The notes under the pieces: model-generated | What the model was told of the DNA's origin: nothing | Databases searched by the model: none | The model's input: the letters and a program-made list of their open reading frames with translations, nothing else | Origin: Octopus sinensis | Taxonomy: Eukaryota | Assembly (NCBI RefSeq): GCF_006345805.1 | Contig: NC_043008.1 | Location: forward strand, 4,898,001-4,962,000 | Reading direction: 5' to 3' | Length of the DNA stretch: 64,000 nt | Shown: piece after piece, positions 4,987-40,138 of the stretch | Numbering within the stretch: position 1 is the first letter of the stretch | Layout: each line of letters begins with the position of its first letter | Program-made: the position numbers and the translations under genes

Positions 4987-4988
<2 letters not shown>
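3360..4988 (-). mobile_element. 5'-truncated RTE-clade LINE (RT C-terminal half, 3'UTR, (GAT)n tail) in a SUB1 intron
   Basis: Open frame 3972-4988 with LLYADD, KTKV, FRYLG, LHGSETW, LRWYGHV, RGRPRKTW; 3'UTR shared with many copies in the window; (cat)n tail at about 3360. Confidence 0.93.
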
Positions 4989-5121
<133 letters not shown>

Positions 5122-5136
5122 ATAAAACTATCTTAC

Positions 5137-12819: not shown

Positions 12820-12878
12820 ACCTACCCACTCCCCACCAACAAGAAAACAGACACACAGGATAACTCACAAAATTCCCG

Positions 12879-20801: not shown

Positions 20802-21677
20802 ATGGCGATTTTGAAAGAGCTGTTGCTGTCAGCCCGACCTTGGTCTTTTTCGGCATCTATCGTCCCTAGTATTGTTGGGATAATCCTAACTAACCCCGAC
20901 CACAATCCGAGCATGTGCCTTATTTGTAACACATTATTCACTGTACTTTTAATTCACGCTGCTGGTAACCTGAACAACACCTTCTGCGATTTCATAAATG
21001 GTGTCGATCAGAAAGATTCTACACACGACCCGACCCTGACCGATGCCAAACTGACCAAAGACCAGCTGTTATCATTGCTAGCCGTTTGCTACATCGGCTC
21101 TCTCTTTTCACTCACTTTCACCGTTGTCCATTCCCCGGCTTCACATCTGTCCTTGATTGTTCTGTACAGTCTGGGAGTTGTTAGCAGTTTGATCTACACC
21201 AGTTGGATAGCCCTCAAATACAGGGCACTGGGCGATTTCCTGATCTTCTTAACTTTTGGGCCTTTAGTAACAGAGTTTTCTTACCTCAGCTGCAGCGGTT
21301 TCTTGTCCGGAAGGGCAGCAGTCCTCGTGCTGCCCCTGGCCACCAATGCGGTCGCCATACTCCACGCTAACAACATGAGAGACGAAGCAGCTGACAGGAA
21401 AGCAGCAATTCGCACTCTACCCATGCTACTTGGAAAGCACATTTCTCGCCAGCTGATGATAGGGCTGCTCTTTTCATCTTACATATTTTTTCTACTCATA
21501 ATCGCTTTCACATGTAACCTGCTCTTTGTTTTGCCGGCATTAACTGCATTTACTCTGGTTCCGCTTTACAAACGCATACAGGAATTTGACATGATCGGAC
21601 TTCCTGAGACACTAGCCAAACTTAATTTAGTACAAGGTTTGCTCTACTGTTTCACGCTTCTTTTCTCAAATATTTAA
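20802..21677 (+). CDS. Divergent UBIAD1-family (UbiA/MenA-type) prenyltransferase, copy A, 291 aa, intronless CDS
   Basis: RPWSFSAS, HAAGNLxNTxxDFxxGxD, KYRALGD..LTFGP, LHANNMRDxxxD..A.IRTL, AKLNL; multiple hydrophobic helices; intact ORF. Confidence 0.93.
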   Translation: MAILKELLLSARPWSFSASIVPSIVGIILTNPDHNPSMCLICNTLFTVLLIHAAGNLNNTFCDFINGVDQKDSTHDPTLTDAKLTKDQLLSLLAVCYIGSLFSLTFTVVHSPASHLSLIVLYSLGVVSSLIYTSWIALKYRALGDFLIFLTFGPLVTEFSYLSCSGFLSGRAAVLVLPLATNAVAILHANNMRDEAADRKAAIRTLPMLLGKHISRQLMIGLLFSSYIFFLLIIAFTCNLLFVLPALTAFTLVPLYKRIQEFDMIGLPETLAKLNLVQGLLYCFTLLFSNI

Positions 21678-23130
21678 ACAATTCAACTTAGGGAACCGAA
21701 ATCATATCAGAGAATGTTTCTTTATTTACCTATAAAAAGGTTTACATAGAGGGGACGTTACAAGGAACATGCAGGATACAAACACGCTTCTTATATACAA
21801 TGAAAGGACAGGTGGAATCATATCAGAGAAGCCTACCTTTATGTTGACTAAATGCAAAACAAAAATGAACAGTAGTTAAGAGAAAAAGAAAAAAAACACA
21901 ACTACTTCGTCCGATAATCGTTAAGTGTCCAGAAAAAAAGGTCACTATTTTAGCAAGGAAAACTGAAAACACCTCGCATTGTGTTGTGGCATGACAAGCA
22001 TATTCAATATTTTTAATGTCGATGACTAAAACAAATATTCCAGCCTATATCACGAAGAAGTCAGTTTTTCCAGATTCATAGCTAACAACTTATCAAACAA
22101 ATCACAGACATTAACCATATAAAACACACCTTAAAATATTGTCCGCTTTAAACACAAAAAGAGCTAAAACCGTCACAAAAAAGTGAGCTTAGGTTTAATA
22201 TTTTGTAATGCTTCATTGCACATTGACACAAAAAAGAAAAAGAAAATCCAAAATTCCCCCGAAAAGATGCTAAAAGTGCTTAGGACTTTCTAAAACACAT
22301 ACAAACCTTCAAGGCAAGTGTTTCTTAACTTTATTTCCTGCATTTTCTCCCATCCCGGCTACACACACAAGAAAAGGCAGTTTTGGATACAATTTATTGC
22401 ATGTTATTAGCAGCTTTATTATAATTCAACATTAAAAAAATCAGCGTCAATGAAACTAAATGTTGTAAAAGAAAAATACTATCAAAGAGAGAATAAGATA
22501 TGAAAGAAAGTGTTGCATGCAGCGCTCAGGTGCGCTACAACTAAGAAATATATATATATGTATGTATGTATGTATATGTATGTATATACACACACAAAAT
22601 AAAATTAAAAAGGAAAATAAAAGATTTTCCAACCTAAAATCAATTCTCCATTGGACTCTTTTATCTTTTACTTGTTTCAGTCATTGAACCTCGGCCATGC
22701 TGGGGCAATTTTGAAAGGTTTAGTCGAATAAATCGACCCCAGTACTTTTTCGTTTTTTCTTCTTCTTGAAGCCTGGTTCTTATTCTAACGATCTTTATCC
22801 GAATAAGGTACGGGGGAGTAAACAAACCAACTCCAGTCGCCAAGCGGCCACAAACACGACCAACTCCATTCACAAACATTGGTTGGTCCGAGGTTAAAGT
22901 AGAAGACATTTGCCCCAGGTGCCGCGCAATGAGACCGAACCCAAAACTACAGATGTGGCAAACAAGCTTTCAATATTAATATATGTACAGCTTCTTCTGT
23001 TGTAGACCGAGAATGTTCGTTATAAAACCTGAAGATCATACCAAACCACGCTTTATGCAGACAAATTAAGTTTACGTATTTAAAATGGGTTTTTTTTACA
23101 GACTAAATTTATAATTATAATATAATTGCA

Positions 23131-23495
23131 TTTTACCCTGTTTCAGTCATTAGACTACGGCCATGCTGGAGCACCGCTATGAAGAATTTTAGTCGAACGA
23201 ATCGACCCCAATACTTTGTTTTATTTAAAGGCTGGAACTTATTCTTTCAGTCTCTTTTGCCGAACCGCTAGGTTACGAGGACGCAAACATACCAGCACTG
23301 GTTGTCAAGAAAGGGAGAGGGGCAACACAGACACACACACACATATACGATGGGCTTCTTTCAGTTTCCGTCTACTAAACCCACTCAGAAGGCTTTAGTC
23401 AGCCCGAAGCTTCAACAGAAACCACTTGCCCAAGGTGCCACCGAACCCAGAATCCTGTTTGGGAAGCAAGCTTCTTGTCACACACCCACGCCTGT
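23131..23495 (-). mobile_element. tRNA-derived SINE
   Basis: Matches the SINE consensus in reverse; a further decayed copy lies at about 22660-22970. Confidence 0.8.
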
Positions 23496-23984
23496 TCTTT
23501 TTGTTTTTAAATAATTACTTTTAAGCACCCGAATGATTAAAAATATTATCATGAATAGATTAAAAATTACTGAGAAAGTAATTTATCAGAAACATGAATA
23601 TTTACATAGCACTTTAATGAAGCTTCGATCATTTTAAGATTTCTTTTAAACCCAAAGCAACGGGTTAGGGCTTTGTTACTACAGCAATATGCATATCTAA
23701 TTTAGCTAACTCCATTCAACCCTCAATGAATCTCTAATTTTAGGGGTTCCCAACTTTGTTTTTCTTTGGTTCATTTTACTCCATAGGCAATTTTTTGAAA
23801 TTCAATTTCCCGTTTCTCTGTTTCGTTCAGTAATTTGAATCTAAACGTCTACCATAATGAAACAACAAAGAGAACATTTAAAATACTCTTTTAAAACATC
23901 ACTTACAGTTCAGATAATAAAAAAAACCCAACTAAGATCCTAACAATTTATGAATTAATGATAAATCAATCTTAGGTAAGTGTG

Positions 23985-24345
23985 CCTCCACTACACGACT
24001 TTGTTTCCTCATAACTCAATGGATTTTTTTTTTTACTGAAAGTTTCTACAAATATCTTTCGGATGGTACAGATTGCGATTATATCGCAATTTACTGGTAA
24101 TGTGGAAAAGAAAAGAAAATTAGTGGACGCACACACATAGATACTGATTTTAAGTTTCGTTTTGTAAAATATATGTCGCGGTATGTGTGCGAGCTCTCAA
24201 TTTAAAAAATTTTTTTAAACATGAAATTTCGATATAAGCATAAACTACATCATCTGAGAGGTGTCTGTAGAAAATGTCATTGAAAAGATACTCATTTTTC
24301 GAAAAGTAATGAGGAAACAAAGTCGATGGAGTTACACTTGTGTAG
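23985..24345. mobile_element. MITE-like element
   Basis: cgactttgtttcctcat / atgaggaaacaaagtcg inverted ends; internal module (aaatatctttcggatgg..gattatatcg) recurs near 11380-11570, 17630-17780 and 35940-36600. Confidence 0.6.
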
Positions 24346-24715
24346 GCATGCCTCATAAACTACCCAATGATACACAATACATATTAAATCCAAAGGAGTA
24401 GACAGAAAATTAGGTTAGTATATATTCACAAAATTGTTCCATTTCAAAAAATCTTAAATTCAGAATCAGCGAAAGTCCCCGCTCCAAATAAATTCACGAA
24501 TCTCATTTCGGGAGTCAATGAATGTTATTGTTTTCATCTTTTACTTGTTTTAGTCATGTGACTGTGGCCATGCTGGAGCACCGCCTTTAGTCGAGCAAAT
24601 CGCCCCCCAGGACTTATTCTATCGGTCTCTTTTGCTGAACCGCTAAGTTACGGGTACGTAAACACAGACTCACAAACATACATATATGACGGGCTTCTTT
24701 CAGTTTCCGCCTACC

Positions 24716-25700
24716 TGTCTTGGCTTTCTTGAGAAAATTGTAATTTGTAAGTTTAACGTAGTTTAATTTTTCGAATTTTATCCAATGAATCGCCTCTATT
24801 GAGCTAAAATCAATGTGCTCCGTCTAAAACTGAGACGACATCCTGTCACTTATGTTTACGTAAACAGCTATTTATACAGAATATACGGAAAGCGTGTTTG
24901 TAAAATTATAGAATTATTTTAATTGTTACGCGTGTGTCTAAAATTATTCGTTTTGTTTTTGTTTTGAGTTTTTGCTTTCGTTTGTTTTCTTAATTGTTAA
25001 ATTAAAATTATTTTCCATTGCTTTCGTCATTTTTTTTCTTAATTGTTATTTACTCTTTTACTTGTTTCAGTCATTTGACTGCGGCCATGCTGGAGCATCG
25101 CCTTTAGTCGGGACTTATTGTTTGTAAGCCCAGTACTTATTCTATCGGTCTCTTTTGCCGAACCGCTAAGTGACGGGGACATAAACACACCAGCATCAGT
25201 TGTCAAGCAATGCCAGGGGGACAAACACAGACACACACACTTATATATATATATATATATATACGACAAGCTTCTTTCGGGAATTAGTCGGCCCGGGGCT
25301 ATAGCAGAAGACACTTGCCCAAGATGCCACGCAGTGGGACTGAACCCGGAACCATGTGGTTGGTTAGCAAGCTACTTTCCACACAGACACTCCTGCGCCT
25401 ATGTTATCCTTAAATTAATTTAACAAAAAAAAAAACGAAAGCAAAAACTCAAAACAAAAACAAAACGAATAATTTTAGACACACGCGTAACAATTAAATT
25501 AATTTAACAATTAAGAAAAAAAAAACCGAAAGGCTAAAATTTAGAGTTAGGGTTAGGGTGAGGGTTAGTGACAGGATGTAGTCTCAGTTTTAGACGCAGC
25601 AAATGATTTTAGCTCAAATGAGGCAATCGATTGGTTAAAATTCGAAAAATTAAGCTACGTTAAACTTACAAATTACAATTTTCTCAAGAAAGCCAAGACA
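24716..25700. repeat. Palindromic structure: two inverted copies of a repeat with a SINE in the loop
   Basis: tgtcttggctttcttgagaaaattgtaatttgtaagtttaacgtag at 24716 versus ctacgttaaacttacaaattacaattttctcaagaaagccaagaca ending at 25700; a second matched block at about 24921-25010 / 25410-25500. Confidence 0.85.
25051..25400 (-). mobile_element. tRNA-derived SINE
   Basis: Head and tail both present in reverse, with an internal deletion. Confidence 0.88.
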
Positions 25701-25774
25701 AAAAATGTTTTATTTTGACACAATCTTCCAGTATACGAAGTTTAAAAGAGTTTAGTTAACTAGAAATTGTTTTG

Positions 25775-26113
25775 AAAACTACCGTTTAAAAGGAAAAGAT
25801 CCACATCTTTTTCTCATGGCTTTATTGAGAAAATTATATAGTATGTAAGATATTTGTTGTTGTTTTTCTGCAATTTCAACCAATCAATGACGTCTATTGA
25901 GGTGAAAACATTCTGTGCCGTATGAATATGTCCCTCGTTTGAGAAACAGATTGGGTTTATTTACACTTGTGAAGAAAAAACATACCCTTCTCCCACCTCT
26001 AACCCTAAACCAGATTGAAATGCAATAGATCGATACTAGGGTCATAATTATGGGTGACAATTTCATATGACTCCGCTAGAAAAAAACTGCCGTTTAAACC
26101 GAAAAGATCCACA
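25775..26113. mobile_element. Non-autonomous repeat bounded by ~30-bp direct repeats (possibly Helentron/HINE-like)
   Basis: aaaactaccgtttaaaaggaaaagatccaca / aaaactgccgtttaaaccgaaaagatccaca; internal ggctttattgagaaaatt and ctaaccctaa shared with the 24716-25700 arms; class assignment uncertain. Confidence 0.5.
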
Positions 26114-28019
26114 AACATAAATCTATTTTATTAAAAGCAAAGTGTTTTAGGAAGAGAAAGTGTGTGCACGCACGGATAAATGACAAATGTAAATGTTTAG
26201 AAAAATAACATACATCGGCAGATAGCGGATCAACCACGAAATAAAAGAAACACTTATGGCATTTGCACTTCTTAGTCGAATTATTTTGTATCTAAACATT
26301 TTGGGGATACTTTCTCCTAAAAGGTGAAATAAAAAATGTCAGTTATCTCCCTTCCATCTGCCAGTCAGTTCCAGAATTATTCCCGTCGCTCGTATTGTGT
26401 GGCTTCAGACATGCTTTGAAATGGCTCATATTACGACACAAGCCAATGGAACATCATTGCTGCAAATAGCAGCCAAATCTCCCTCGAACCGCACCTTATC
26501 ACAACCAGAGCAAACACTAAAAAATATACGTCTACATAAAACTTAGAAACACGAGTCATAGTTGAGATGCTGTAGACCAAAGGTCAGATCTGGGACTTCT
26601 TAGATCTGGATTCTAAGCAGCAACTGTTCAGGAAGGTCGAGATATAACAAAGATGCGCTAGGTGCATTTGAGGGAACTTGGTTGTTATTTCTAACGGATG
26701 GGACGAACGCGCAGAACTCACACTGAAAATAGTAATAATTTGATTTTTTTTTTAAATCTGTGATATTTAACAAAATGTGCAAGGCAGTGAACTGGGAGAA
26801 TCGTTAGGGAATCGGGGGGAAATGGCTTGTGGCATTTGTTCCGGGTCTTCACGATCTGAGTTCACATCCCTCCGAAGCCAACTTTGACTTTCATCCCTTC
26901 GGAGTCGACAAAACGTAATACCAATAATTTAAAGGAGTCGATTGCATCGACTAAATCGCTCTTCTCTGAATTGTTGGATTTATGCCGAAATCAGAAATCA
27001 ATATATACCATATGTAATAATATCACAAATAAGATATATGGTGTTAAATAATTAAATTGATATAGCTTTTATGGTGGAAAACGCTACGTCTGTCTCATTC
27101 GAGTATTATACTGATTTGAAAAACTTTGAACCCAAGGGATTTAGTTAACAAAACCTCAAGAGTTAAAAATTGGGTTTAAAAATGCAAGGGAAATAACTCT
27201 AAATTTCGGTTTTGACTGCCAAATTTACTTCCAACGATGTCGTTTTGGGTTCACTCCCACAGCTCTATCCCCAGGCCAACCAAAAGCTTGTGAATGGATT
27301 TGGTAGACGGAAATTAATATATATATGTGTGTTTGTTCGCCACCACACCTGACAACCAGTATTGGTTTGTTTACATCCCCATAGCTTAGCATTTCGGCAT
27401 AAGAGACTCATAAGTACCAGACTTTAATTTTTTAAAAAAAGTACTGGGATCGATTTATTTGATTAAATCCTTCAAGTTCAGTGACAGAAACAAGTAAATG
27501 ATACAAAATTCCTTTTGTTAATCAGTAAAGAATGGAGACCAAAACTGACAAAGATAGCAATATTTGGCTGAAATGGTTGAATATGCAAAGAATTTTAAGA
27601 ATCCTATTTAAAATACTGTGAAGTTGGATTAGTGTGGGTGTAGAGGCCACACTGAAGTGGAATATGGGATTACCTTAGGATAATCTTGGATTAGTGTTGA
27701 TAAATTATGAATGGAAATGAAAAACCAGATCAGGAAAACAATTGAATCTGAGAGACATGCCTGGGCTGCTCAGGAATTTCCAGAAGCACAAACTTTCATA
27801 AATAATCCTCTCCATAAAGCTTGAGATTTTTTAGGGGAGTGGGGAAGTCAGTTACATCAACCCCAGCACTCAACTGGTACTTATTTTATCAACCTTGAGA
27901 GGATGAAAGGCACTCAGAACGTAAAGAAAGACAAAATGCCACTAAGCATTGTGTCTGCTATGCTAACAATTCTGCCAGCTTGCTGCCTTAAGTTTCATAA
28001 ATAATAAAGAGTGAATATT

Positions 28020-30306
28020 TCTGGTGTCAAGGCCAAAAGACTGGCACCAAGAAAATAGTCAGCCAGCAGGTCTAAAGGAAAATATATTCCTAAGTGCAGA
28101 CTGAAGAATAAAGATTTTTGTTTGCAAGTGATGTTACAGGAGAGAAATGTGTTCGAATGGATGATGGTGCACTTGCTTTTAGTGATTCTGAAAAAGAAAG
28201 AGGTTTGGAGAAGCCATTATGAAAGACTGCTGAATGTGGAGAATGAATGGGAGGAGGAGAGCCCTCCAAATGTTGACCCAGTAGAGGGACCAGCTATCCC
28301 AGTAGACAGCTCCCTAGTAGTAAAAGCAATTAAGGGTATGAAGCCAGGAAAAGCCCCTGGCCCATCAGGAATCACTGATGAGATGCTTAAAGCATCTGGT
28401 GGTGTGGGCTATGGCCTAGTCACCCACATTATAAACCAGGTAGTACATAACGGAGTCATACCCAATGACTGGCATAGCAGCACCATAGTCAACTGCTACA
28501 AGGGTAAAAGTGATGCTCTAGATAGGAATAACTACAGGGGTATTAAACTGCTGGATCAGGTGATGAAGGTCACAGAGAGGGTCATAGTCCATCTCATTAG
28601 GGAGAGAGTCTGCTTAGATGAGATGCAGTTTGGTTTTGTTCCTGGTAGAAGCACCACTGATGCCATTTTCCTGGTTCAACAACTGCAGGAGAAGTACCTA
28701 GCTAAAGATAAACCCCTCTACATAGCTTTTGTGGACTTGGAGAAAGCCTTTGACAGGGTCCCCTCATCCCTTATCTGGTGGGCAATGCGGAAACTGGAGA
28801 TTGACGAACGGCTTAATAAGGGCTGTTCAGGCCCTATACAGAGAGGCCGTTAGTAAGGTTAAGATTGGCAACGAGCGTAGTGAAGAATTCCGGGTAGAAC
28901 TAGGGGTCCACCAAGGTTCAGCCCTTAGTCCTCTTCTATTTATTATAGTCCTCCAGGCAATAACAGAGAAATTCAAAATGGGTTGCCCCTGGGAGCTCCT
29001 CTATGCTGACAACCTCATAGCAGAATCACTACTGGAACTAGAAAAGAAATTTCGGGTGTGGAAGCTAGGTTTAGAATCAAAAGGCCTTAGAGTAAATGTA
29101 GCAAAGACCAAAGTTATAGTAAGCAGAAAGGCGAACTCATCACACACCGCCTCGGGCAGGTGGCCCTGCTCGATCTGTAGAAAAGGTGTAGGTAGAAACT
29201 CCATAAGATATACCCAGTGTAAGAGGTGCAGCAACATCAAAGGAAAATTAACTGAGAAGATAGTTTTCATGTGCGGCAGATGCACAGAGGCAATAGACAC
29301 CACAGATACTCAGAAAACATTCCATTACACTCCAGGGGGAGAAACTAGAAGTAGTTGATAGTTTCCACTACCTAGGTGACCAAGTTAGTAGTGGAGGTGG
29401 ATGCTCAGAGAGTGTCACCACTAGAATACGAATAGCCTGGGCAAAGTTTAGAAAGCTCCTACCCCTGCTGTTGACAAAAGGTCTCTCGCTCAGAGTGAAA
29501 GGTAGATTGTATGATGCATGTGTGCGACCCGCCATGCTTCACAGTAGTGAAACATGGGCTGTGACTGCAGAGGACATGCGTAGGCTTGAAAGAAATGAAG
29601 CTAACATGATCCACTGTCTGTGTAATGTCAGTGTGCACACACGACAGAGTGTAAGCACCCTGAAAGAAATGCTGGACATAAGAAGCATAAGATGTGGTGT
29701 GCAAGAGAGATGTTTGCGCTGGTATGGTCATGTACTGCGGATGGATGAGTAGAGCTGTGTGAAGAAGTGTCACTCCCAAACAGTTGAAGGTATCCGGGGG
29801 AGAGGTAGACCCAGGAAGACATGGGATGAGGTAGTCAAGCATGACCTTCGAACCTTGGGCCTCACAGAGGCAATGACGAAAGACCGAGATCTCTGGAGAT
29901 ATGCTGTGACTGCGAAGACCCGACAAGTAATGTAAGTTCAGGGCTACTTCATGCACCAGTTTTGCATAGCCACAGCCCATCCAATGTACCTTGGATCGCA
30001 AAACGACCTGCTGTGCTTACCTTGGAGCGTAGGGTGACCTGTCGTGCTTGAGGAGACCTATTGAGTCAAGTACATCAACATCAAAATAAATATCAAATGG
30101 AAATTGTAGTTATGATACCTGTGCCACTGGCACGTAAAAAGCACCCACTACACTCATGGAGTGGTTGGCATTAGGAAGGGCAACAAGATGTAGAATCACT
30201 GCCAGATCAGACTGGAGCCTGGTGCAGCTTCCTGGCTTCCCAGACCCTGGTCGAACTGTCCAACCCGTGCTAGCACAGAAAACGGATGTTAAACGATGAT
30301 GATGAT
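28020..30306 (+). mobile_element. 5'-truncated RTE LINE with most of the RT, 3'UTR and (GAT)n tail; decayed
   Basis: ORF pieces 28122-28853, 28729-29358 and 29471-29752 with KAPGPSG, NYRGIKLL, DLEKAFDRVP, QGSALSP, LLYAD, LHSSETW, LRWYGHV; frameshifts and stops. Confidence 0.93.
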
Positions 30307-30339
30307 ATATATATATATACATACACACACACATACATA

Positions 30340-30705
30340 TACAGGGGTTGCACAAAATAATGGAAACACCTAGCATCATAATTTTGAAATATCTATAAAA
30401 CCATCAAAAATATGTTTATTTTTATATTTTTTGATTTATTATTAGTGTTGCTTGATATGTTTTGCTAAAATTGCTGTTTCTTTTAAGATATCATCGGAAA
30501 AAGCTAATTAAAATTCATTAAAATGACAGATCTATCGGACTTTCAAAGAGGTAAAATTGTTGGTGCTCATATGGCAGGTGCTAGCACAACAAAAGCAGTG
30601 AAATGTTTGGTGTATCAAGAAGTACTGTCTCGAAAGTAATGACAGCCTTTGAGAAAGCGGGAAAAACCTCCTTGTGTAAACAAAACCAAAACTTTCAGAT
30701 AGAAG
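30340..30705 (+). mobile_element. Tc1-like transposon left end with transposase N-terminus
   Basis: TA|CAGGGGTTGCACAAAATAATGGAAACACC TIR; ATG at 30523: MTDLSDFQRGKIVGAHMAGAS..., then frameshift into FGVSRSTVSKVMTAFEK (HTH). Confidence 0.8.
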
Positions 30706-32025
30706 AGTTGTAGGAGATTCCAAAGTCGTCTGGAGTTGAAGCCAATGGTGATTTTATTGAATACATTTACTCTTTTGTATTTCAATATATTTTTATGTAA
30801 TTTTGGTAAATATGACTATTAAAATGAGATGTCAATGTTATTTCCTTTTTGCATAATTTAGACAATATATTCACTGCACTCTGTATACAGGTGTATCTGT
30901 GTATGTGTCTTTCTGTATCTGTAGGTGCCTCAGAGTGCATGCATGCACATATATTTTCACTAATGCATCTAATTATATTTTGGACTTACACTTTTCTTAT
31001 GTACATCTATATTGACTTTTCCCATTGTTGAGTTGTTCAGGGACAAATGTAACTCTTTCCCAAATAAATTGTACTTCATATCCGAGGCCCCTATAAAGCC
31101 ATGAGGTGTTACTCAGGCACTCAACTATGAGTCCACTGCATCTTATAGCAGTAACAGCCGTAAGCTAATGGAGTTCATAAGGTAATCATTTATTCTTTTG
31201 TCATCCCTCTTTCTTATCACTGCTCTATACTCAGCCAACACTTCATTTTGAAACATGTGTATACCGAGTTCTACATTTGGTTATTGGTCTCACCATGCCT
31301 AAGTGAAATATAAACATCATCATCATCTTCATCACTTAATGTTCGCCTTCCATGCTGGCATGGGTGGAACAATTTGACAGGAGCCAGCCAGGCAGAAGCC
31401 TGCACCAGACTTCTGTGACTGTCTTGGCAAGATTTTTACAGCTGGATGCCCTTCCCAACACCATCCGCTCAGCAGAGTGGACTTTGTGCTTTCTATGTGG
31501 CATGAGCACAGGTGAGGTCATTTTTGGCAAGGTTTATACAGCTGGATGCCTTTCCAAACACCAACCACGTTACAGTGTGGACAGGATGCTTTTCAAGAGG
31601 CACCTGCACTGACAGGGTCACCAAGTAACTTGCAAACAAAAATCTTTTGAGAGGGGAGGGGGCATTGGAGGAGGTGACCTCCTTGTCAGATGATGAAAGG
31701 TTATTGTGACTTAGAGAGGCAGAAACAGGTGTGCAGCTGCAAAGGAGGTACATGGTTACCTAACCTGAGGGAAGAGCATGAGAACAAGAGAGAGTGGGAG
31801 ACAGCAGGATAGAGATGGTGGCAAAGTGCTGGGCATGATAATAGGGGTTGGGGATCAGAATAGAAATGGGATGGTCAAGTAAAGGCAGAGAGAAATATAA
31901 ATGGTGGCAAATGCCAGGGCATACCCTTCAGGTTCGAAGGACATTGCCAAAGAAGTATGATTAGAGAGTGCGGAAAGGAAGTGAGTAGTGAAAACCTGGG
32001 GGTGGGGGGCTACTACCAGTTAGCA

Positions 32026-33000
32026 ATCATCATCGTTTAACGCCTGTTTTCCATGCTGGCATGGGTTGGACGGTTCAACTGGGGTCTAGGAAGCCAGGAG
32101 GCTACACCAGGTCCTGATCTGACCAGGCAGTGTTTCTACAGCTGGAGGCCCTCCCTAACGCCAACCACTCCATAAGTGTAGTGGGTACTTTTTATATGTC
32201 ACTGGCACAGAGGCCAGAGGAGCTGGCATCGACCATGATCAGATGGTGCTTTTTACATGCCACCAACACGGAAGCCAGTCAAAGCAGCACTGGCATTGGC
32301 CACATTTGGATTGTGCTTTTTATGTGCTACCAGCATGGGGCTCACAACTACAATTTCCATTTGATTCGATTTTTATATTGCTGATGTTGATGTACTTGAC
32401 TCAATAGGTCTCCTCAAGCATAGCATGTCGCCCTACAATCCAAGGTACTTTTGAGTGGGCTGGTTATGTGACACTAGTGTAGGTTACAGCTGTGGACTCA
32501 CTTTATTTGTTTATTTGCAGGGTTTTCTCAGTCACAGCATACCTCCAGAGGCGTCAGTCTTTTGTCATTGCCTCTGTGTGGCCCAGCGTTTGAAGGTCAT
32601 GCTTCACCACCTCATCCCATGTCTTCCTGGGTCTCCCTCTACCCCGGATTCCTTCAACTGTTTGGGAGTGGCACTTCTTCACACAGCTCTACTCATCCAT
32701 CCACAGTACATGACCATACCAACAAAAACGTCTCTCTTGCATGCCACATCTGATACTTCTTATGTCTAACATTTCTCTCAGGGTGCTTACACTCTGTCGT
32801 CTGTGCACACTAACATTATACATCCATCGGATCATGCTAGCTTCATTTCTTTCAAGCCTACGCATATCCTCCGCAGTCAGGGTCCATGTTTCACTGCCGT
32901 GAAGTATGGCGGTTCGCACACATGCATCATACAATCTACCTTTCACTCTGAGCAAGAGGCCCATTGTCACCAGTAGGGGTAGAAGCTTTCTGAACCATGC
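32026..33000 (-). mobile_element. RTE LINE 3' fragment
   Basis: ORF 32689-32970 (RLYDACVRTAILHGSETW) plus 3'UTR and (GAT)n tail. Confidence 0.9.
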
Positions 33001-33479
33001 CCAGCCGCGAAGACAGGATTGGGGAGTGAGAGCTAGGCATTGAGTATGAAGGAGGAAATGTGAGGAAGAGGTCTAGAGACATCATCATCATTGTTTAACG
33101 TCCGCTTTCCATGCTAGCATGGGTTGGACTGAGGGCTGGCGAACCAGATGGCTGCACCAGGCTCAAATCTTGATTTGGCAGAGTTTCTACACTTGGATGC
33201 CCTTCCTAACGGCAACCACTGAGACGTAGATTGATTTGTTGGGGTAGGATGTAAGAAAAGTTTTCTTATGTGTGGGTGGAACACACAGATCAGGAACTAG
33301 CGGACAGCAATGATACAGTGAGACAGGATTTGTGAGTGGGAGGTAAGCATAGTGCATCAAGTGAAAATGTGAGGAAGAGAAGAGATGTAGTTTGGTTTGT
33401 TGTGGTAGAGTGTGTGAGAAGTTTTCTTGTTATGCTAGAATCAGTTTCACTGACATGGGTGGGTCTTCTCAAGAACCTC

Positions 33480-34790
33480 ATACCTCCAATGTCATTTCCT
33501 GCACGAGGCCCAACATCCTGAGATCGATCCTTACCACGCCATCCCATGTCTTCCTGAGTCTCTCTCCTCCACAGGTACCATCCACTTCTTTATGCAGCTG
33601 TCCTCATTCATACACATCACATGTCCAAACCAACATAGTCTTCTCTCTTGCATGCTACATTTGATTTTGCCTTATGCCCAACTTTCCTCTCAATACATTT
33701 GCACTTTTGTCATACATGCACACTGATGTTGCACATCCAACAGAGCATACTGCCTTCATTTCTCTCCAGTCTATGCAGGTCTTCTGCATTTAGAGCCCAT
33801 GTCCCACTACCATGGAGTATAGCCATTCACACACATACATCATACAGCCTACCTTTCACTCTGAGAGAGAGAGAGAGAGTCCTTTTGCTGCCAACAGAGG
33901 TAATAGCTCTCTGAACTTCCTTCACTCTATTCTTATCCTAGAAACAATACTTTAAGAGCATCCTCCACCATTGCTAATTTGGTCACCTAGATAAAAGAAA
34001 CCATCCACAACCTCAAGAGAGCCTCCTGGGCATTTGAGAGAGTCTAAGTCCTGTGTGCTCTTAGTACTTGTTGTTCCTGCACATCTGCCACATACAAAGA
34101 TGACTTTATCTGTTAATCTACCTGTGCTTCCACTGCACCTCTTATGTGTCCATAGCTTACACTGGGGGCAGCGAATGGAATTTCTTCCAACTCTTTTCCT
34201 ACATATTGAGCAGGGCCATTTACTTGATGGAATGATAGTTTTATCTTCTTTCTTGCTAACAACTTTCGTCTTTGCTAGGTTAACTTTGAGGCCCTTTGAT
34301 TCCAGGTTTTCTTTCAATACCTGGCATTTCTTCTCCAATTCTACTAAAGATTCTGCAATAAGAGCAAGGTCATCAGCATATAGCAGTTCCTATGGGCATC
34401 CAGTTTTGATTTCTTCTGTTCTGGCCTGGAGGACTATAATGATTGAGTGGGCTGAGAACTGAGCCCTGGTGAACCCCTACTTGTATGCTAAATTCATCAC
34501 TGTATTCATGGCCGACTTTCACCCTACTCACACCACCACTGTACATGGATTGTACAGCTCTAACAAGCCACTCCTCTACTCCTAACTTTCTTAGAGATGA
34601 CCATATAACAGAGCAGGGAACTCTGTTGAAAGCTTTCTCTGTTAAAAGTTGATGAAGGCTAAGTACAATGGCTTACTTTTGGCCAAGTACTTTTCCTGCG
34701 GCTGTCTCACTAGGAAGATGGCATCTGTGGTACTCTTCCCAAGTATAAAACCAAATTACATCTCATCTAGTTTAATTCTTTTCCTAATCA
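33480..34790 (-). mobile_element. Older, decayed RTE LINE fragment
   Basis: ORF 33952-34338 (KGLKVNLAKTKV, WPCSICRK, FFYLGDQI); an upstream YADD-like region. Confidence 0.85.
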
Positions 34791-34849
34791 ATATATACAT
34801 ATTTATTTCACTTATTTTCTAGGAAGTTACTTGTTATGTGTGGTCCGTC

Positions 34850-35115
34850 GCTTTACTGGCATCTGTGCTGGTGGCATGTGTAAAAAGATTCGAGCAAGGT
34901 CATTGCCAGTACCACCTGACTGGCCCCCATGCCGATGGCACGTAAAAAGCACCCACTACACTCTCGGAGTGGTTGGCGTTAGGAAGGGCATCCAGCTGTA
35001 GAAACTCTGCCAGATCAAGATTGGGGCCTGGTGCAGCCATCTGGTTCGCCAGCCCTCAGTCAAAATCGTCCAACCCATGCTAGCATAGAAGGCGGACGTT
35101 AAACGATGATGATGA
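34850..35115 (+). mobile_element. RTE LINE 3'UTR/tail fragment
   Basis: gcacccactacactctcggagtggttggcgttaggaagggcatccagc...ttaaacgatgatgatg; similar fragments near 7760, 14580, 31320, 33080, 52600, 53750 and 60720. Confidence 0.85.
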
Positions 35116-38100
35116 AAGTGCTGAGCAGTATAGATGACCCAGTATAGCCCTAACCTGGCAGAGTTTCTTTGTCTATTTGACTGAAATATTCATCATAATC
35201 ATCAACATTAAAAATACTGAATATACATGTAAACCCACAATACTATTGTAAGATGTTTTCAATTTGTATGTCATATTATTGTCAATAAATTGTTTTATTC
35301 ATTGTCTTAATTTGCTTAGGAAATTGAATAACAGTTTGTTTTTTTTTTTGCACGTGTGTAATACAATCAAATGTAAATTTTGTACAAGTCATGTCAGTTA
35401 AAATATTTTCAGTTTTTTTTTATTTTTGTTTTATTATCTTGATAAGGTAAGGCAAATTTCATCGAGTTAACGTTTAAGCAAATTGAGACATGGATATACA
35501 TAATACAGAAATGATGTTTCTTTTTAAGAGTAATTTTTTTTTTATTTTTATAACTTTCTCATCATTATTATTATTGTAAGGAAATCAATTTTCCACCATG
35601 TATAATATTAAAAACAAAAAAGTTTAAGAGAGAGTACAAAAGGAAATCTTTCCCTTTTCCGGACTTTGCATCCAACTTCTAAAAATCTGAACGGTGTTTT
35701 ATGAAATATTAACATCGCCCAAAACAGAATTGGTTGGCAGAGGGACTGCAACATTTTTCGACACGTGTTGCTATCGTTTAATCCTAAGTTTAGTATGACT
35801 TCGTAAACCTGATCGAGAGCGAATGATTAAGCCGTCTTCTTGTACATCTGATGATGGTGCAATCTCCATTGGTTTCGACGATGTCATTTAGATGTTCGAT
35901 CAACTTCAACACCCACCACTCAAGTGTATCATCCCCCACCGAATTTCTTTCTTCATAACTTCCAGAAAAATGAATATTTTTTAGTGAAATTTCCTACAAA
36001 TACCTTTCAGATGACGTAGATTCTGATTATATCGGAAATGTTTGTAAAAAAAATGTTTGTGAGTGGGGTAAAGAGTTTTGGAAAACTAACACGAGTTGGC
36101 TTTGTTTCTCCAAAACTTTTATAACATTGGGTATTTTTTAATGTAATTTTCCACAAATACCTTTCAGATGGTGTAAATTATGATTATATTGGAATTTCAC
36201 GTGTAAAAGAAAAAAATTGGTCGGCTCGCACACACACACTGACACGTTTTACTTATGAACAAATCGAAACTCGAAAGATATTCTAAAGAGAGTTAGTATG
36301 AATGGGTGCTTGCAATTCTTTTTCTTAAATTTCGATGTAATCGTAATGTTGTACATCTGAAAGTTATTTGTAGACAATTTCATTACAAAAATATTAATTT
36401 TCCATAAAGTAACGAGGAAACAAATCCAACATTGTGGAATTACCCGAAACTCCTTCCCACCTCCGAAAACACTTTTTCACAACAAATTTCAATAGAATCA
36501 TAATCTACACCATATGAAAGATAGTTGGAGAAAATTTTATTAAAAAGTACTTTTCTGGAACTTTTGACGAAACAAAGTCGATGGAGCACACTTCATAACT
36601 ATTCGACCGTGCTTAAGTGTGCGTATACCATATTAAAAGAGACTAAATTAGACCAGGAGTGTGTATGCATACATACATTATTATACACTGTGACCATTCT
36701 CTTTTAATACGGCAGGTTGTGGTTTTAGGGAAAATTCTAACTATTTCTAAAAGATCACGCACCCGCTTAGGGCAGGTGAACCGGGATAAATTACCCGAAG
36801 TGGGGTAAGAATAAAATTCTTAGGGGTAATGAGGACTCATTAGACGGAAGTAAAATTACATAGAAAACGAGTTCTTTCAATAAACCTTTTGAATTCAAAG
36901 AATCTGCGATTTTCTTCTTTTCAAATTAAGGGGGATAAAGTCGGAGTAAATAAATATATTTTGGTGTAATTGGTTACCAAAAAAGTTCCCCGACCCCTGA
37001 CTTGGAGACTCGTGTAATCAGCGTAAGAATCATTGATGATGCTGTACTTGCCGTATTATTTGTTATTTTTCTTCAGCCACAGGTTATGGAGCAAACGTGA
37101 TGAAAAACATTTCAGGCGACACAGTGAAGTACAACTTAGGAAAGAGTTGCTAGGGATCTTCGTAAGTAGGGCCGGAATAGGTCTGATGGGACATCGAGGC
37201 CATTTTCCGGGGGGGGGGGGGCTACGGTTTTGCTAACTTAGAACATAAAATAGCAGAGAGGGCCCGACTAAATGTAGATGCCCTAAAACTTAAAAGGGCC
37301 TCAGTAGATTCAGAGGGACTCAGATTTTAGAAAGACTTCCTCCCGTCCCCGATAGTTGAGGCAAAAATCTGCTACAGAGGCATTTTTGTAAACACACTAG
37401 AATAATTAAGAAAACAGCACATGTCATTTACAAAACAAAATTAGCAACTGTGAAAAACAAAAAAAAAATAGGGGTATTAAAACTTGACATATGTATCTCT
37501 CAGGTGTATGTCTATCGTCATAAACTAACTCGTGGTAAATATATAATTAACTAATTAGTAATGCCCCGTGTTATTCGTGGTTATATAAAATATCAGCTGG
37601 GTGGAGAAATCATATAACCAATTACCTTCTTAAGAAGATATGCCCTTGTGCAATAACTACAGCCTAGAACTTGAAACATTAGTTTGTATCAAGATTATGG
37701 ATGTGGTAAAGATTGTTTGAACACGAAACAAAAGATCGCGAACTAAAGAAGATGAGAGGAAGAAAGAAGAAAACGTAAAGCACCAAGATTAGTTATCTCA
37801 ACTGAGAATATTGTCTTGAAAATAAATGAATTTTTTGAGGGGTGAGCGAGGTCGATTAGGATCTTCACATCGACCCCGGTGCTCAAATGCTGCTTATCTT
37901 ATCGACCTCGAAAGGATGAAACGCGAAGTCGGCTCCGACAGTATTTGATCTCAGGACATAAAGAGCCGGAGGAAATAGCGCTAAATAATTTGTGCAGCAC
38001 CTGAAGAAAACTGATTTCTGATTTTGGCCAACAATCTTGAAAGAAGATGGTTAGTCGAATAAACCGATCCTTACTACTGGATTGATACTTTATTTTATCG

Positions 38101-39193
38101 ATCTTGGAATGAAAGATAAACTTGACCTTAGAGAGATTTGAACTCAGAAATAAGGAGCTGGAATAAATACTGCAAAGTATTTCTTCCACACTTCAACAAT
38201 TCTGCCAATAATATTGATAATTCATGCTAATCATGACGAACGGTCGAAGTCATTATTGTTGTTTAGCACCGAGTCAGTTTTAATTGAAGGAGAACGAATC
38301 GTTGGTCAAAAAGTCCTACAAGTCAGATCGATAAAATAAAGTACCAGTCAAATACTGAGATCAATATAATCGATTCTGTACTCTACAATCAACATATAAA
38401 GTCTTGGATGTGAATTATTGTGTCGAGTAGGTAAAACGTTAATCATAAAAGTTGTGACCATCCTGTCTATTACTCAGACATGGTTCCTCAGCCTTCGTAG
38501 GGTGTGATATGACTACCATTTCTAGCAGGTGGAACAGTCGCGTAATTTGATTTGAAATTTTGAAGCATTTTAATTATTCTGAAGACATCATAAACAAGGA
38601 TACGACTACACTATCATAATTGATAGAAGGCCACAAATTACAGTAGAAAGGTTTATTCGATGAAACCGGTACTAGTAATGTGACAAGTCCTTATTTCAAT
38701 ATGATTTTAACTCAGAACATAAGGGAACCTGTTAACCTAGCATTCCGTTTCAACCACTCTAAAGTCTCACTAATAACTATTATTTCAACTATTGGTGAGA
38801 GTATAATCGATGTACCTGATTATATCGTAACTAGTAATTACAGGTGTTTATTTTATTGATACAAAAACGGAAACCCTGTCAGTATTTGTCCTCGACATAA
38901 AGGAACATGAAATACCGCAAGAATTTTGTCGGCCGCTTTACTGATTTCGCCTTCTCAACACAATTCACCCACAGGACCTCACATGGCAGAGTGGCACAGT
39001 ACAAAATCGACCCCAGTATTTGACTGGTACTTTATTTTATCGATCGCGAAAGGCTGAAAAACACGCTATGAATACTGCAAGGCTTTACCAAATCTGTTTC
39101 TCCATCAATAACAAAAAACAATAATAAAAACAAGTATAAAAATAACAATAATAAATACTTTGCCTTTCGATGGATCTTGCTGCGAATGTTTGG

Positions 39194-40138
39194 TCAGTGT
39201 TTTAGTGCCAATATACAAGCTATAACATAAAGAAGTCCAAAAATAAAATTCAACCGTGCCACTTTCCGAGGCAATTGTTCCAAGTGACGGTAACGAAAAT
39301 ATCTCTCCAATTTAAAGGATTCAAACACGGTTAAGAGAGGTAGAAAATACCATTTGGAATAATGCAGTCCCAAGTAGACAAAGGCAATGTAGGGCAGAAA
39401 TAAAAGCATCACGAACAATATGTAGGAGCCAGTATGGCCCAGCAGAATGGCTAAGGTAACAATCCCAGCATCCGTGTCACTTTCCATATGTCGAGTGTTA
39501 TTGCAATGAAGGACTGCTTCAGCACTGATAGCTAAAGGGATGGCATAAAAAATGGGTTCGTTCGATAGTTCACCGGTTTGTGAAAGAAAGGCGAACACGA
39601 CTGTAAGGGGACCAAAAGTGAGGAAGACTACCACGTCTCCGAGAGCAACGTACTTCAGTCCAAGACCACCAGTGTAAAGGAAACTTCCGGATAAACCTCC
39701 AAAGTAAATAAGGGCCAAGTGCTCCATGCGGGCAGGAGAAATATAGGCAAGCAACAAAAATCCACAGCATCCCAACACGTAGGACAACCCTCCCAGCCAA
39801 GCAATGTCACCCGGCATCAACACAGAATCGACCAATGTTTTGTGATTAGCATCTTTCTTTTTCTTGGTGTCGATTCCTCGAACATAATCGACGTAGGTGT
39901 TGACAAGGTTTCCAGCAGCATGGACAGAGAGGGCAGTGAGACAGGTGACCAAAGATATGAGAAGGCTAAATTCGGCATGCTCCATATAGGCAAGGGCGCT
40001 GCCTAAAGCAACTGGGGTGAAAGAGGATGTGAAAGACCATGGTCGAAGGGCTGCTAAGTATTTAGACAATTCCTGTGAAAGAGAAGTTTTCTTGACACGA
40101 CACTTGTTTCCTTCTTTAGCATGGCTATTGTTTTGCAT
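39194..40138 (-). CDS. UBIAD1: UBIAD1 prenyltransferase, conserved copy B, 314 aa, intronless CDS
   Basis: LRPWSF..FTPVALGSALAY, HAAGNLVNTY, EHLALIYFGGLSGSFLYTGGLGLKYVALGD, YAIPLA..EA.LH.NNTR, AGIVTLAILLG, ARLN; the true ATG is 40138 (the ORF track starts on a GTG at 40141). Confidence 0.96.
   Translation of the reverse strand: MQNNSHAKEGNKCRVKKTSLSQELSKYLAALRPWSFTSSFTPVALGSALAYMEHAEFSLLISLVTCLTALSVHAAGNLVNTYVDYVRGIDTKKKKDANHKTLVDSVLMPGDIAWLGGLSYVLGCCGFLLLAYISPARMEHLALIYFGGLSGSFLYTGGLGLKYVALGDVVVFLTFGPLTVVFAFLSQTGELSNEPIFYAIPLAISAEAVLHCNNTRHMESDTDAGIVTLAILLGHTGSYILFVMLLFLPYIAFVYLGLHYSKWYFLPLLTVFESFKLERYFRYRHLEQLPRKVARLNFIFGLLYVIACILALKH

What the first reader, a model, noticed from the sequence alone, without database searches (positions are those of the whole stretch)
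20802..40138. Convergent pair of intact UBIAD1 paralogs with complementary active-site erosion: candidate enzyme/pseudoenzyme system
Seen: two intact UbiA-family ORFs in tail-to-tail orientation 17.5 kb apart. Known: UBIAD1 is usually a single gene in well-studied animals (human UBIAD1, fly heix). It makes MK-4 and, through GGPP sensing, controls HMG-CoA reductase degradation. Seen: copy B is very close to vertebrate UBIAD1 overall but lacks D117, D118 and D236. Copy A is strongly diverged but keeps N102, D106, D112, D118, D236 and D240. Inference: the catalytic and sensor/HMGCR-binding roles have been split between paralogs, or A acquired a new substrate and the two may act together. This may be an undescribed cephalopod quinone/isoprenoid module.
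Basis: partly seen in the sequence, partly recalled or inferred. Interest (0 to 1): 0.82.

Follow-up and report, generated by a model that had tools for sequence, protein, structure and literature searches.

The report
Old UBIAD1 gene pair in cephalopods
Octopus, argonaut and cuttlefish all keep two tail-to-tail copies of the vitamin-K2/prenyl-transfer gene UBIAD1: one is almost unchanged except for four odd active-site changes, and the other evolves fast but keeps every catalytic residue. The pair is real, ancient and unstudied, but there is no evidence yet that either copy is a dead enzyme.

Summary
Window 20802-21677 (+, copy A, 291 aa) and 39194-40138 (-, copy B, 314 aa) are intact single-exon UbiA/UBIAD1 genes, tail to tail and 17.5 kb apart. 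The spacer holds broken reverse-transcriptase fragments.

The pair is not special to this genome. Argonauta has the same arrangement, 3.6 kb apart. A-type and B-type genes also occur in decapodiforms, and A is transcribed in Sepia esculenta larvae. The pair therefore predates the octopus/cuttlefish split.

B is the orthodox UBIAD1:
- dN/dS is 0.04-0.11.
- Only 4 of 90 near-invariant positions are changed: S116K, D117K, R119K and D236H. All four lie in the cap loop or the second Asp motif.
- His236 is found only in coleoid B among 516 homologues.

A is strongly diverged:
- dN/dS is 0.19-0.35.
- 26-31 of the 90 positions are changed, including part of the HMGCR-contact helix.
- It keeps every Mg/diphosphate ligand and Y174/K181/Y182, and it folds confidently as UBIAD1.

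"Complementary erosion" is only partly right. D118 is retained in the window's B, both copies lack D117 and R119, and human D236A is reported as active. The enzyme/pseudoenzyme split is therefore untested and not favoured. Whether A arose by a cephalopod-specific duplication is unresolved. Moderate interest: a new variant of a known kind.

The parts
20802..21677 (+). Copy A: single-exon UBIAD1-like gene, 291 aa plus stop (fast-evolving paralogue)
   Evidence: ORF. PF01040 E 4e-27. Annotated at NCBI, with an ortholog in O. bimaculoides, XP_052828030. AF2 pLDDT 91 and pTM 0.89. Best PDB match is 8djk_B, TM 0.80-0.83. dN/dS 0.19-0.35.
20976..21008 (+). A first Asp-rich motif, NTFCDFINGVD (N59/D63/D69 = human N102/D106/D112)
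21009..21044 (+). A cap loop (L2-3), QKDSTHDPTLTD. D118 equivalent is kept; S116, D117 and R119 are lost; V122T.
   Evidence: This is the only low-confidence stretch of the model (residues 72-78).
21195..21221 (+). A hinge, YTSWIALKY. Y174, T175, K181 and Y182 are kept; G176S, G177W and G179A (G176S/G177W are octopod-specific).
21369..21395 (+). A second Asp-rich motif, NNMRDEAAD (D194/D198 = D236/D240), intact
39194..40138 (-). Copy B: single-exon orthodox UBIAD1 ortholog, 314 aa plus stop
   Evidence: ORF. PF01040 E 8e-30. 8djk_B E 3e-95. Falls inside Mollusca in trees. dN/dS 0.04-0.11.
39869..39901 (-). B first Asp-rich motif, NTYVDYVRGID, intact
39827..39868 (-). B remodelled cap loop, TKKKKDANHKTLVD. 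The canonical KKSDDRTLVD is replaced: S116K, D117K, R119K, plus a 3-aa insert.
39476..39502 (-). B second motif, NNTRHMESD. H217 (CAT, 39488-39490) replaces D236; D240 is kept.
   Evidence: The codon is CAC in Argonauta and CAT in the other B genes examined.
28059..29752 (+). Frame-shifted reverse-transcriptase (non-LTR retroelement) fragments in the spacer
   Evidence: RVT_1
33952..34338 (-). Second retroelement fragment (PHD-like zinc finger, same family as 3972-5132)
41084..41234 (.). Short non-coding block upstream of B, conserved with Argonauta (73% over 157 nt). Possible 5'UTR or promoter element.

Best explanation
Shown: this is an ancient, selectively maintained pair of UBIAD1-family prenyltransferase genes shared by coleoid cephalopods.

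Copy B is the orthodox UBIAD1 ortholog. It is almost frozen in sequence. In the coleoid stem it acquired a remodelled substrate-cap loop (SDDR replaced by K-K-D-insert-K) and a His in place of the first Asp of the second Mg2+/diphosphate motif.

Copy A is a fast-evolving but constrained and transcribed paralogue.
- It keeps every metal/diphosphate ligand and the catalytic Tyr/Lys.
- It lacks the N-terminal extension.
- It has replaced many otherwise invariant residues. Five replacements are fixed in all A genes: V65S, V122T, G142S, Q206C and I250M.
- In octopods it has also changed the TM4 face that contacts HMGCR in mammals.

Inferred: both proteins still bind prenyl diphosphate and both are probably catalytically competent. 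B probably has altered Mg2+/GGPP handling. A probably has shifted substrate or partner specificity (neofunctionalisation, or partition of roles). This is not an enzyme paired with a dead pseudoenzyme.

Inferred and unresolved: the adjacency and the shared single-exon structure suggest a local inverted duplication. Its date (cephalopod stem or older) is not resolved.
For: Gene reality and family.

Conservation of the pair:
- Argonauta has A and B convergent and 3.6 kb apart.
- O. bimaculoides has both on one chromosome.
- Decapod A-types are P0255, P0418, P0419 and P0420.
- A-type P0420 and B-type P0249 occur in the same run, SRR27666064.
- Octopod and decapod A are reciprocally monophyletic in one of the three trees; in the tree decapod A is not monophyletic.

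Transcription: P0418 contigs with shared 5' and 3' ends come from S. esculenta larval RNA-seq runs.

Selection:
- dN/dS is 0.19-0.35 for A and 0.04-0.11 for B.
- Between Octopus and Argonauta, nucleotide similarity is essentially confined to the two ORFs, apart from dispersed repeats and one short block upstream of B.
- His236 is kept with a synonymous CAT/CAC difference.

Residue audit: of 90 positions that are >=95% conserved in 131 canonical animal UBIAD1, B changes 4 and A changes 26-31. All Mg/diphosphate and catalytic positions are invariant in the 8 A sequences.

His at position 236 occurs only in coleoid B among 516 homologues.

Fold: the A model has pLDDT 91, and its best match is UBIAD1 8djk_B.

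Literature: human D236A retains or increases MK-n synthesis (PMC4398444).
Against: - No enzymatic, localisation or interaction data exist for either protein.
- In E. coli MenA, mutating the D236/D240 equivalents abolished function. In AfUbiA, D198A weakened GPP binding 45-fold (PMC4106721).
- R119G lowers human UBIAD1 activity. B could therefore be badly impaired.
- Octopod A carries G177W at an SCD position.
- Transcription of A was shown only for Sepia, not for Octopus.
- Phylogeny does not place A next to B. A+B monophyly is rejected with one taxon set (p-AU 0.006) and not with another (p-AU 0.10).
- A and B share about one rare residue state (T225A), no more than a control group does.
- Within Sepia, the A pair gives dN/dS 0.65-1.0, based on few substitutions.
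Confidence: 0.6

Rival explanations
1. Enzyme plus pseudoenzyme/sensor split. B has lost catalysis through D236H and cap-loop remodelling, and survives as an HMGCR-binding, GGPP-insensitive regulator resembling a Schnyder-dystrophy variant. A carries the MK-4 synthase activity.
For: - All four changes in B fall in the cap loop or the second Asp motif. Two of them (R119, D236) are positions mutated in SCD.
- The chance that all four fall among the 14 of 90 conserved positions in those two elements is 4e-4. The region was defined after the fact.
- SCD variants stay bound to HMGCR and resist GGpp (PMC9314443).
- B keeps interface residues V101 and E158 (K156 is R). Octopod A has N/T at 101, S at 156 and L/S at 158.
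- A keeps all Asp ligands.
- The octopus genome encodes INSIG and a multi-exon HMGCR.
- MenA equivalents of D236/D240 are essential.
Against: - Human D236A is as active as wild type or more so.
- B keeps every other cavity and catalytic residue under dN/dS 0.04-0.11. A GGPP sensor would also need most of these, so this point is weak either way.
- A also lacks D117 and R119, and octopod A has G177W. A is therefore not a pristine enzyme.
- Decapod A still has R156 and E158 (three of the four sequences), so the loss of the interface is octopod-specific, while D236H is coleoid-wide.
- D236N occurs in another animal clade.
Confidence: 0.18
2. A is not a cephalopod-specific duplicate. It belongs to an older, patchily retained UBIAD1-like lineage that happens to lie next to UBIAD1.
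For: - ML trees put the A clade outside canonical bilaterian UBIAD1, together with an unidentified sequence, P0256 (98/97; 93/65).
- The AU test rejects A+B monophyly in the first data set (p 0.006).
- No excess of shared rare residues between A and B was found.
Against: - The A stem is extremely long (1.1-5.8 substitutions per site), and the program flags long-branch joins.
- With eight A sequences and no bacterial outgroup, A+B monophyly is not rejected (p 0.10).
- A and B are immediate neighbours in both Octopus and Argonauta.
- Both are single-exon, as is Patella UBIAD1.
- Both have lost the otherwise about 98% conserved S-D-D-R loop signature.
- No A-like protein scoring between 282 bits (decapod A) and about 200 bits (ordinary UBIAD1) turned up in 1.8 billion representatives.
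Confidence: 0.3
3. A is a redundant copy drifting towards loss, with no distinct function.
For: - A evolves about three times faster than B at non-synonymous sites.
- Within Sepia, dN/dS is 0.65-1.0.
- No exact-match transcript contig of the window species' A is in the collection.
Against: - The ORF is intact in all eight species sampled across octopods and decapodiforms.
- dN/dS is 0.19-0.35 on longer branches.
- All catalytic and ligand residues are invariant, and five A-specific replacements are fixed.
- A is transcribed in Sepia esculenta.
- The fold prediction is confident.
Confidence: 0.04

Closest known systems
Vertebrate UBIAD1 (human/hamster; PDB 8djk/8djm), MK-4 synthase and GGPP-regulated HMGCR partner
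   Same: B aligns over residues 19-311 at E 3e-95. It keeps 86 of 90 near-invariant animal positions, including the first motif, the hinge YTGGxGxKY, NNxR, D240, the RPWS signal and TM4 E158/H159. The A model superposes on 8djk_B with TM 0.80-0.83.
   Different: B has D236H, S116K, D117K, R119K and a 3-7 residue insert in the cap loop. A is only 34-40% identical, lacks the N-terminal extension, and changes 26-31 invariant positions. Whether either protein has activity or binds HMGCR is untested.
Schnyder corneal dystrophy variants of human UBIAD1 (e.g. R119G, D236E)
   Same: The substitutions fixed in B hit two of the same positions (119, 236) and the same two structural elements (the L2-3 loop and the second motif) in which SCD mutations cluster.
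   Different: The B substitutions are fixed wild-type states, maintained for the whole coleoid radiation with a second paralogue present. The residues differ (K and H, not G and E). No phenotype or ER-retention data exist.
Bacterial MenA (1,4-dihydroxy-2-naphthoate polyprenyltransferase)
   Same: Both copies hit MenA NCBIfam models (A best 1e-26, B best 1e-40) and share the NxxxDxxxxxD ... NNxRDxxxD architecture.
   Different: All scores are far below the equivalog cut-offs. These are animal UBIAD1-type proteins, not MenA.
Other lineage-specific UBIAD1 duplicates (e.g. the two copies on one Liolophura sinensis contig)
   Same: Two copies on one chromosome-scale contig within a mollusc genome; their spacing was not examined.
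   Different: The chiton copies are near-identical recent duplicates that sit as sisters in the tree. The cephalopod pair is ancient and highly asymmetric.

Membership tests
UbiA prenyltransferase superfamily (PF01040) | Significant match to the family HMM above the gathering score | tested here: met
   A scores 95.5 bits and B 104.3 bits, against a cut-off of 34.2.
UbiA prenyltransferase superfamily (PF01040) | All-helical multi-TM UbiA fold | tested here: met
   The A model has pLDDT 91; its top PDB hits are UBIAD1, archaeal DGGGP synthase and AfUbiA/ApUbiA. B matches solved UBIAD1 8djk_B at E 3e-95 over residues 19-311.
UBIAD1/MenA subfamily | First motif N102-x3-D106-x5-D112 | tested here: met
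   Present in A (N59/D63/D69) and in B (N80/D84/D90).
UBIAD1/MenA subfamily | Second motif N232-N233-x-R235-D236-x3-D240 | tested here: not met
   Met in A (NNMRDEAAD). Not met in B (NNTRHMESD): His replaces D236 in all 12 coleoid B sequences and in no other of 516 homologues.
Animal UBIAD1 (canonical orthogroup) | Cap-loop signature S116-D117-D118-R119-T-L-V-D (>=98% conserved in 131 animals) | tested here: not met
   B has K-K-D-(ANH)-K-T-L-V-D. A has T-H-D-P-T-L-T-D.
Animal UBIAD1 (canonical orthogroup) | Phylogenetic placement inside the bilaterian UBIAD1 clade | tested here: inconclusive
   B lies inside Mollusca. A has a long branch near the root; AU tests give p 0.006 and p 0.10 depending on taxon set.
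MK-4 synthase (functional UBIAD1) | Menadione plus GGPP to MK-4 activity | not testable with these tools
   Needs expression and LC-MS assay. The literature gives conflicting expectations for D236 loss.
HMGCR-binding UBIAD1 | TM2/TM4 interface residues V101, K156, E158 (PMC9314443) | tested here: inconclusive
   B has V, R and E (conserved or conservative). Octopod A has N/T, S and L/S. Decapod A has V, R and E in three of four sequences. Binding itself was not tested.
Pseudoenzyme | Loss of residues indispensable for catalysis, with retained fold | tested here: inconclusive
   B loses one of four Mg ligands plus R119. Human D236A is active, but the MenA equivalents are essential. All other catalytic residues are retained.

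The most novel reading that the evidence does not exclude
Coleoid cephalopods have naturally separated the two jobs of UBIAD1. B would be a fixed 'Schnyder-like' form (D236H, R119K, cap-loop insert) that binds HMGCR and has lost or blunted GGPP-triggered release and catalysis. A would be the working prenyltransferase, possibly with a new acceptor or prenyl-chain preference, freed from the HMGCR interface. The D236H change would have become tolerable only because A already existed.
Probability: 0.15. Interest if true: 0.75.

Novelty: new variant of a known kind. Interest (0 to 1): 0.45.

Why it matters
UBIAD1 joins vitamin K2 (and possibly CoQ) synthesis to control of HMG-CoA reductase. In humans, single substitutions at positions 119 and 236 cause Schnyder corneal dystrophy. 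Here a whole animal clade has fixed substitutions at exactly those positions in its highly conserved copy, and it keeps a second, divergent copy with an intact motif set. This is a ready-made natural experiment on two questions: which residues serve catalysis and which serve GGPP sensing or HMGCR binding, and how a membrane prenyltransferase diverges after duplication. It also corrects the database picture, in which both genes are simply labelled 'UBIAD1 homolog'.

Tried and rejected
1. Retrogene origin of the intronless copies. Rejected: Patella vulgata UBIAD1 is also a single coding exon.
2. A-to-I RNA editing restoring Asp at B position 236. Rejected on codon grounds: CAT/CAC can only be edited to CGT/CGC (Arg), not GAY. 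The Sepia A contig that starts at the shared transcript 5' end is identical to the longer, presumably genomic, contigs over 1399 nt.
3. Placing A by phylogeny. Three ML trees and two AU tests gave a long-branch artefact pattern and conflicting p-values. A count of rare residues shared by A and B was no higher than for a vertebrate control.
4. Identifying the species behind the SRA-derived contigs by searching papers for run accessions. This worked only for Sepia esculenta. The 'octopus X' runs (SRR118693xx), P0006 (SRR26188895), P0256 (SRR25569770) and the SRR276660xx decapod stayed unidentified.
5. Evidence for transcription of A in Octopus. The five 2.2-kb contigs are collinear with the genome and end in simple repeats, so they say nothing either way.
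6. Synteny of the pair in a decapod. The only long contig (28.8 kb) ends 1.7 kb past A and shows no B within 10 kb upstream.
7. Nautilus copy number. No identifiable Nautilus sequence was found. P0006 has B-like features with SDDR and D236 intact, but it groups weakly with gastropods.


Full report
WHAT IS IN THE WINDOW

- The standard-code ORF scan finds two long intact ORFs at the stated ends. Copy A is 20802..21677 (+), 291 aa. Copy B is 39194..40138 (-), 314 aa. A GTG one codon upstream of B is not the annotated start.
- Both match Pfam UbiA well above threshold: A scores 95.5 bits and B 104.3 bits, against a cut-off of 34.2. Their best NCBIfam hits are MenA-type models, far below the equivalog cut-offs.
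- The two proteins are 37% identical over 283 residues. B matches the solved UBIAD1 chain 8djk_B at E 3e-95.
- The genes are tail to tail, with 17,516 bp between the stop codons.
- The spacer carries frame-shifted reverse-transcriptase and PHD-finger fragments of a retroelement that also occurs elsewhere in the window.
- The genome is 2.72 Gb in 13,516 contigs. The window is C12:4898001-4962000 on a 79.8-Mb contig. Database records show it is an Octopus closely related to O. vulgaris and O. bimaculoides; the assembly size suggests O. sinensis, which rests on my own knowledge.

THE PAIR IS OLD AND CONSERVED

- In Argonauta hians, the A and B orthologs lie in the same convergent arrangement, only 3.6 kb apart. 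Apart from dispersed repeats and one short block upstream of B, nucleotide similarity between the two species is confined to the two ORFs. The larger Octopus spacer is therefore plausibly due to retroelement insertion.
- A profile of three octopod A proteins was searched against 1.84 billion representatives. It returned one intermediate hit, P0255 (282 bits), ahead of ordinary UBIAD1 at about 200 bits.
- P0255 has close relatives: P0418 (92% identical), P0419 (71%) and P0420 (62%). They share A-specific features such as NNMRD and TLTD.
- Three runs that carry P0418 are Sepia esculenta larval RNA-seq runs, named in PMC10141105, PMC10571815 and PMC11917092. The 2.1-2.5 kb contigs from independent runs mostly start and end within a few bases of one another. 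The A-type gene is therefore transcribed in a cuttlefish, apparently as an unspliced mRNA.
- A-type P0420 and B-type P0249 both occur in run SRR27666064, so one decapodiform has both.
- In one of the three trees octopod and decapod A are reciprocally monophyletic; in the tree decapod A is not. The pair therefore predates the octopod/decapodiform split.
- In the window's own genome there are only these two full copies. There is also a 99.5%-identical partial copy of the 3' end of B on another chromosome.

SELECTION

- B: dN/dS 0.04 for Octopus-Argonauta, and 0.06-0.11 among decapods.
- A: dN/dS 0.19-0.35 on all longer comparisons. dN is about three times that of B.
- The one close Sepia pair gives 0.65-1.0, based on few substitutions.
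- The A ORF is intact in all eight species sampled.
- Neither gene is a pseudogene. A is relaxed or adaptively diverging.

RESIDUE AUDIT

I aligned 131 canonical animal UBIAD1 sequences with 5 coleoid B and 8 coleoid A sequences. I listed the 90 positions that are >=95% conserved in the canonical set.

B differs at four positions:
- S116K, D117K and R119K, accompanied by a 3-7 residue insertion in the L2-3 cap loop.
- D236H, the first Asp of the second Mg2+/diphosphate motif.
- All four lie in the two elements that close over the diphosphate. This happens by chance in about 4e-4 of draws, with the caveat that I defined the region after seeing the data.
- His at 236 occurs in all 12 coleoid B sequences and in none of the other homologues among the 516 examined. 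Another animal clade has Asn there.
- The His codon is CAC in Argonauta and CAT in the other B genes examined.

A differs at 26 positions (decapods) to 31 positions (octopods):
- It also lacks D117 and R119; S116 is kept in three of the four octopod sequences, including the window's copy, and is lost in Argonauta and the decapods.
- It has five replacements fixed in every A sequence: V65S, V122T, G142S, Q206C and I250M.
- It has many changes in TM4. In octopods only, it also has G176S/G177W in the hinge and loss of E158/H159.
- Every A sequence keeps N102, D106, D112, D118, Y174, K181, Y182, N232, N233, R235, D236 and D240.
- An AlphaFold model of the window's A is confident (pLDDT 91, pTM 0.89). 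Only the cap loop is disordered. The best structural match is UBIAD1 8djk_B (TM 0.80-0.83).

WHAT THE LITERATURE SAYS ABOUT THESE POSITIONS

- In AfUbiA, the equivalents of N102, D106, D236 and D240 coordinate two Mg2+ ions. D198A (= D236) weakens GPP binding 45-fold. In E. coli MenA, mutating these positions abolishes function. Positions 112-122 lie on the mobile L2-3 loop (PMC4106721).
- In human UBIAD1 expressed in Sf9 microsomes, D236A had equal or higher MK-2, MK-3 and MK-4 synthesis than wild type. R119G, N102S and D112G were markedly reduced (PMC4398444).
- SCD variants cluster in L2-3, in Hx6-7 and in the cavity. [quoted passage not shown] The HMGCR interface uses UBIAD1 TM2/TM4 (V101, K156, E158) (PMC9314443).
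- No paper in the searchable library connects UBIAD1 with cephalopods.

INTERPRETATION

The facts fit an asymmetric, ancient paralogue pair.

- B keeps 86 of 90 invariant positions, including all remaining cavity residues and the HMGCR-contact face. It has carried a specific, conserved alteration of the diphosphate/Mg site since before the coleoid radiation.
- A keeps the complete ligand set but has remodelled much of the rest, including (in octopods) the HMGCR-contact helix.
It gains some support from the SCD-like location of B's changes, from the interface pattern, and from the presence of INSIG and a multi-exon HMGCR in the genome.
- It is not the best-supported reading, for four reasons:
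  - D236A is active in the human enzyme.
  - Both copies have lost R119.
  - The window's A has a bulky G177W at an SCD position.
  - The conservation of B's other catalytic residues is what a working enzyme (or at least a working GGPP binder) would show.
- I therefore favour two prenyl-diphosphate-binding, probably active proteins with diverged properties (confidence about 0.6). I put the pseudoenzyme split at about 0.18.

ORIGIN OF A

- The A clade has a very long stem and is drawn to the base of the tree, next to other long branches.
- A+B monophyly is rejected in a data set with bacterial outgroups (p-AU 0.006). It is not rejected in a metazoan-only set with eight A sequences (p-AU 0.10).
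- A and B share no more rare states than a control group does.
- Four observations favour a cephalopod-lineage inverted tandem duplication (about 0.7):
  - Immediate adjacency in two octopod families.
  - Shared single-exon structure, which Patella UBIAD1 also has.
  - Shared loss of the SDDR signature.
  - Absence of A-like proteins outside cephalopods in the exhaustive search.
- An older origin cannot be excluded (about 0.3).

VERDICT

The pair is real, functional by evolutionary criteria, coleoid-wide and uncharacterised. It is a new variant within a well-known family, not a new kind of system. It offers a testable natural separation-of-function experiment for UBIAD1. Interest 0.45.

Noticed in passing
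G000:C10:74862921-74864695 (L008) versus window 37696-39471: A 99.55%-identical copy, at least 1.78 kb long, of the last 92 codons of B plus its downstream sequence sits on another chromosome. It starts abruptly inside the B coding region. It is either a very recent segmental duplicate or an assembly artefact.
   Followed up: partly
G000:C12597:34984-36114, 95667-96798, 116469-117600: Three tandem, nearly intron-free HMG-CoA-reductase catalytic-domain copies lie on a small contig, in addition to the multi-exon HMGCR on C16:32379220-32390799. They may be retrocopies, a lineage-specific expansion, or contamination.
   Followed up: no
window 3972-5132 (-), 12608-13075 (-), 28059-29752 (+), 33952-34338 (-): Several degraded copies of one non-LTR-type retroelement (RVT_1 plus a PHD-like zinc finger) are present. 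Two lie between A and B and plausibly account for much of the 17.5-kb spacer, against 3.6 kb in Argonauta.
   Followed up: partly
window 41084-41234; L001 16304-16457: This is the only non-coding, non-repeat block that aligns between Octopus and Argonauta in this locus (73% over 157 nt). It lies just upstream of B and may be a 5'UTR or promoter element.
   Followed up: no
proteins P0029/P0034 clusters and P0260 (not in window): Another animal UBIAD1 clade, sister to the leech Helobdella in the tree, has Asn instead of D236. Replacement of this Mg ligand is therefore not unique to cephalopods. Whether those species also have a second copy was not checked.
   Followed up: no
L014 versus L032 (Sepia A orthologs): The two closest A sequences (92% aa identity) give dN/dS 0.65-1.0, much higher than on longer branches (0.2-0.3). 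The number of substitutions is small. It could be noise, recent relaxation, or positive selection in Sepia.
   Followed up: no
G000:C9550:44126-44798: A further UbiA-family hit spans two overlapping, differently framed segments across most of the domain, on a small unplaced contig. It is distinct from the multi-exon hits on C3 and C7 (presumably COQ2 and COX10). Its identity was not determined.
   Followed up: no
window 11928-12611 (+): A 227-aa open frame with no Pfam match abuts a retroelement fragment. It is possibly a retroelement gag-like ORF.
   Followed up: partly
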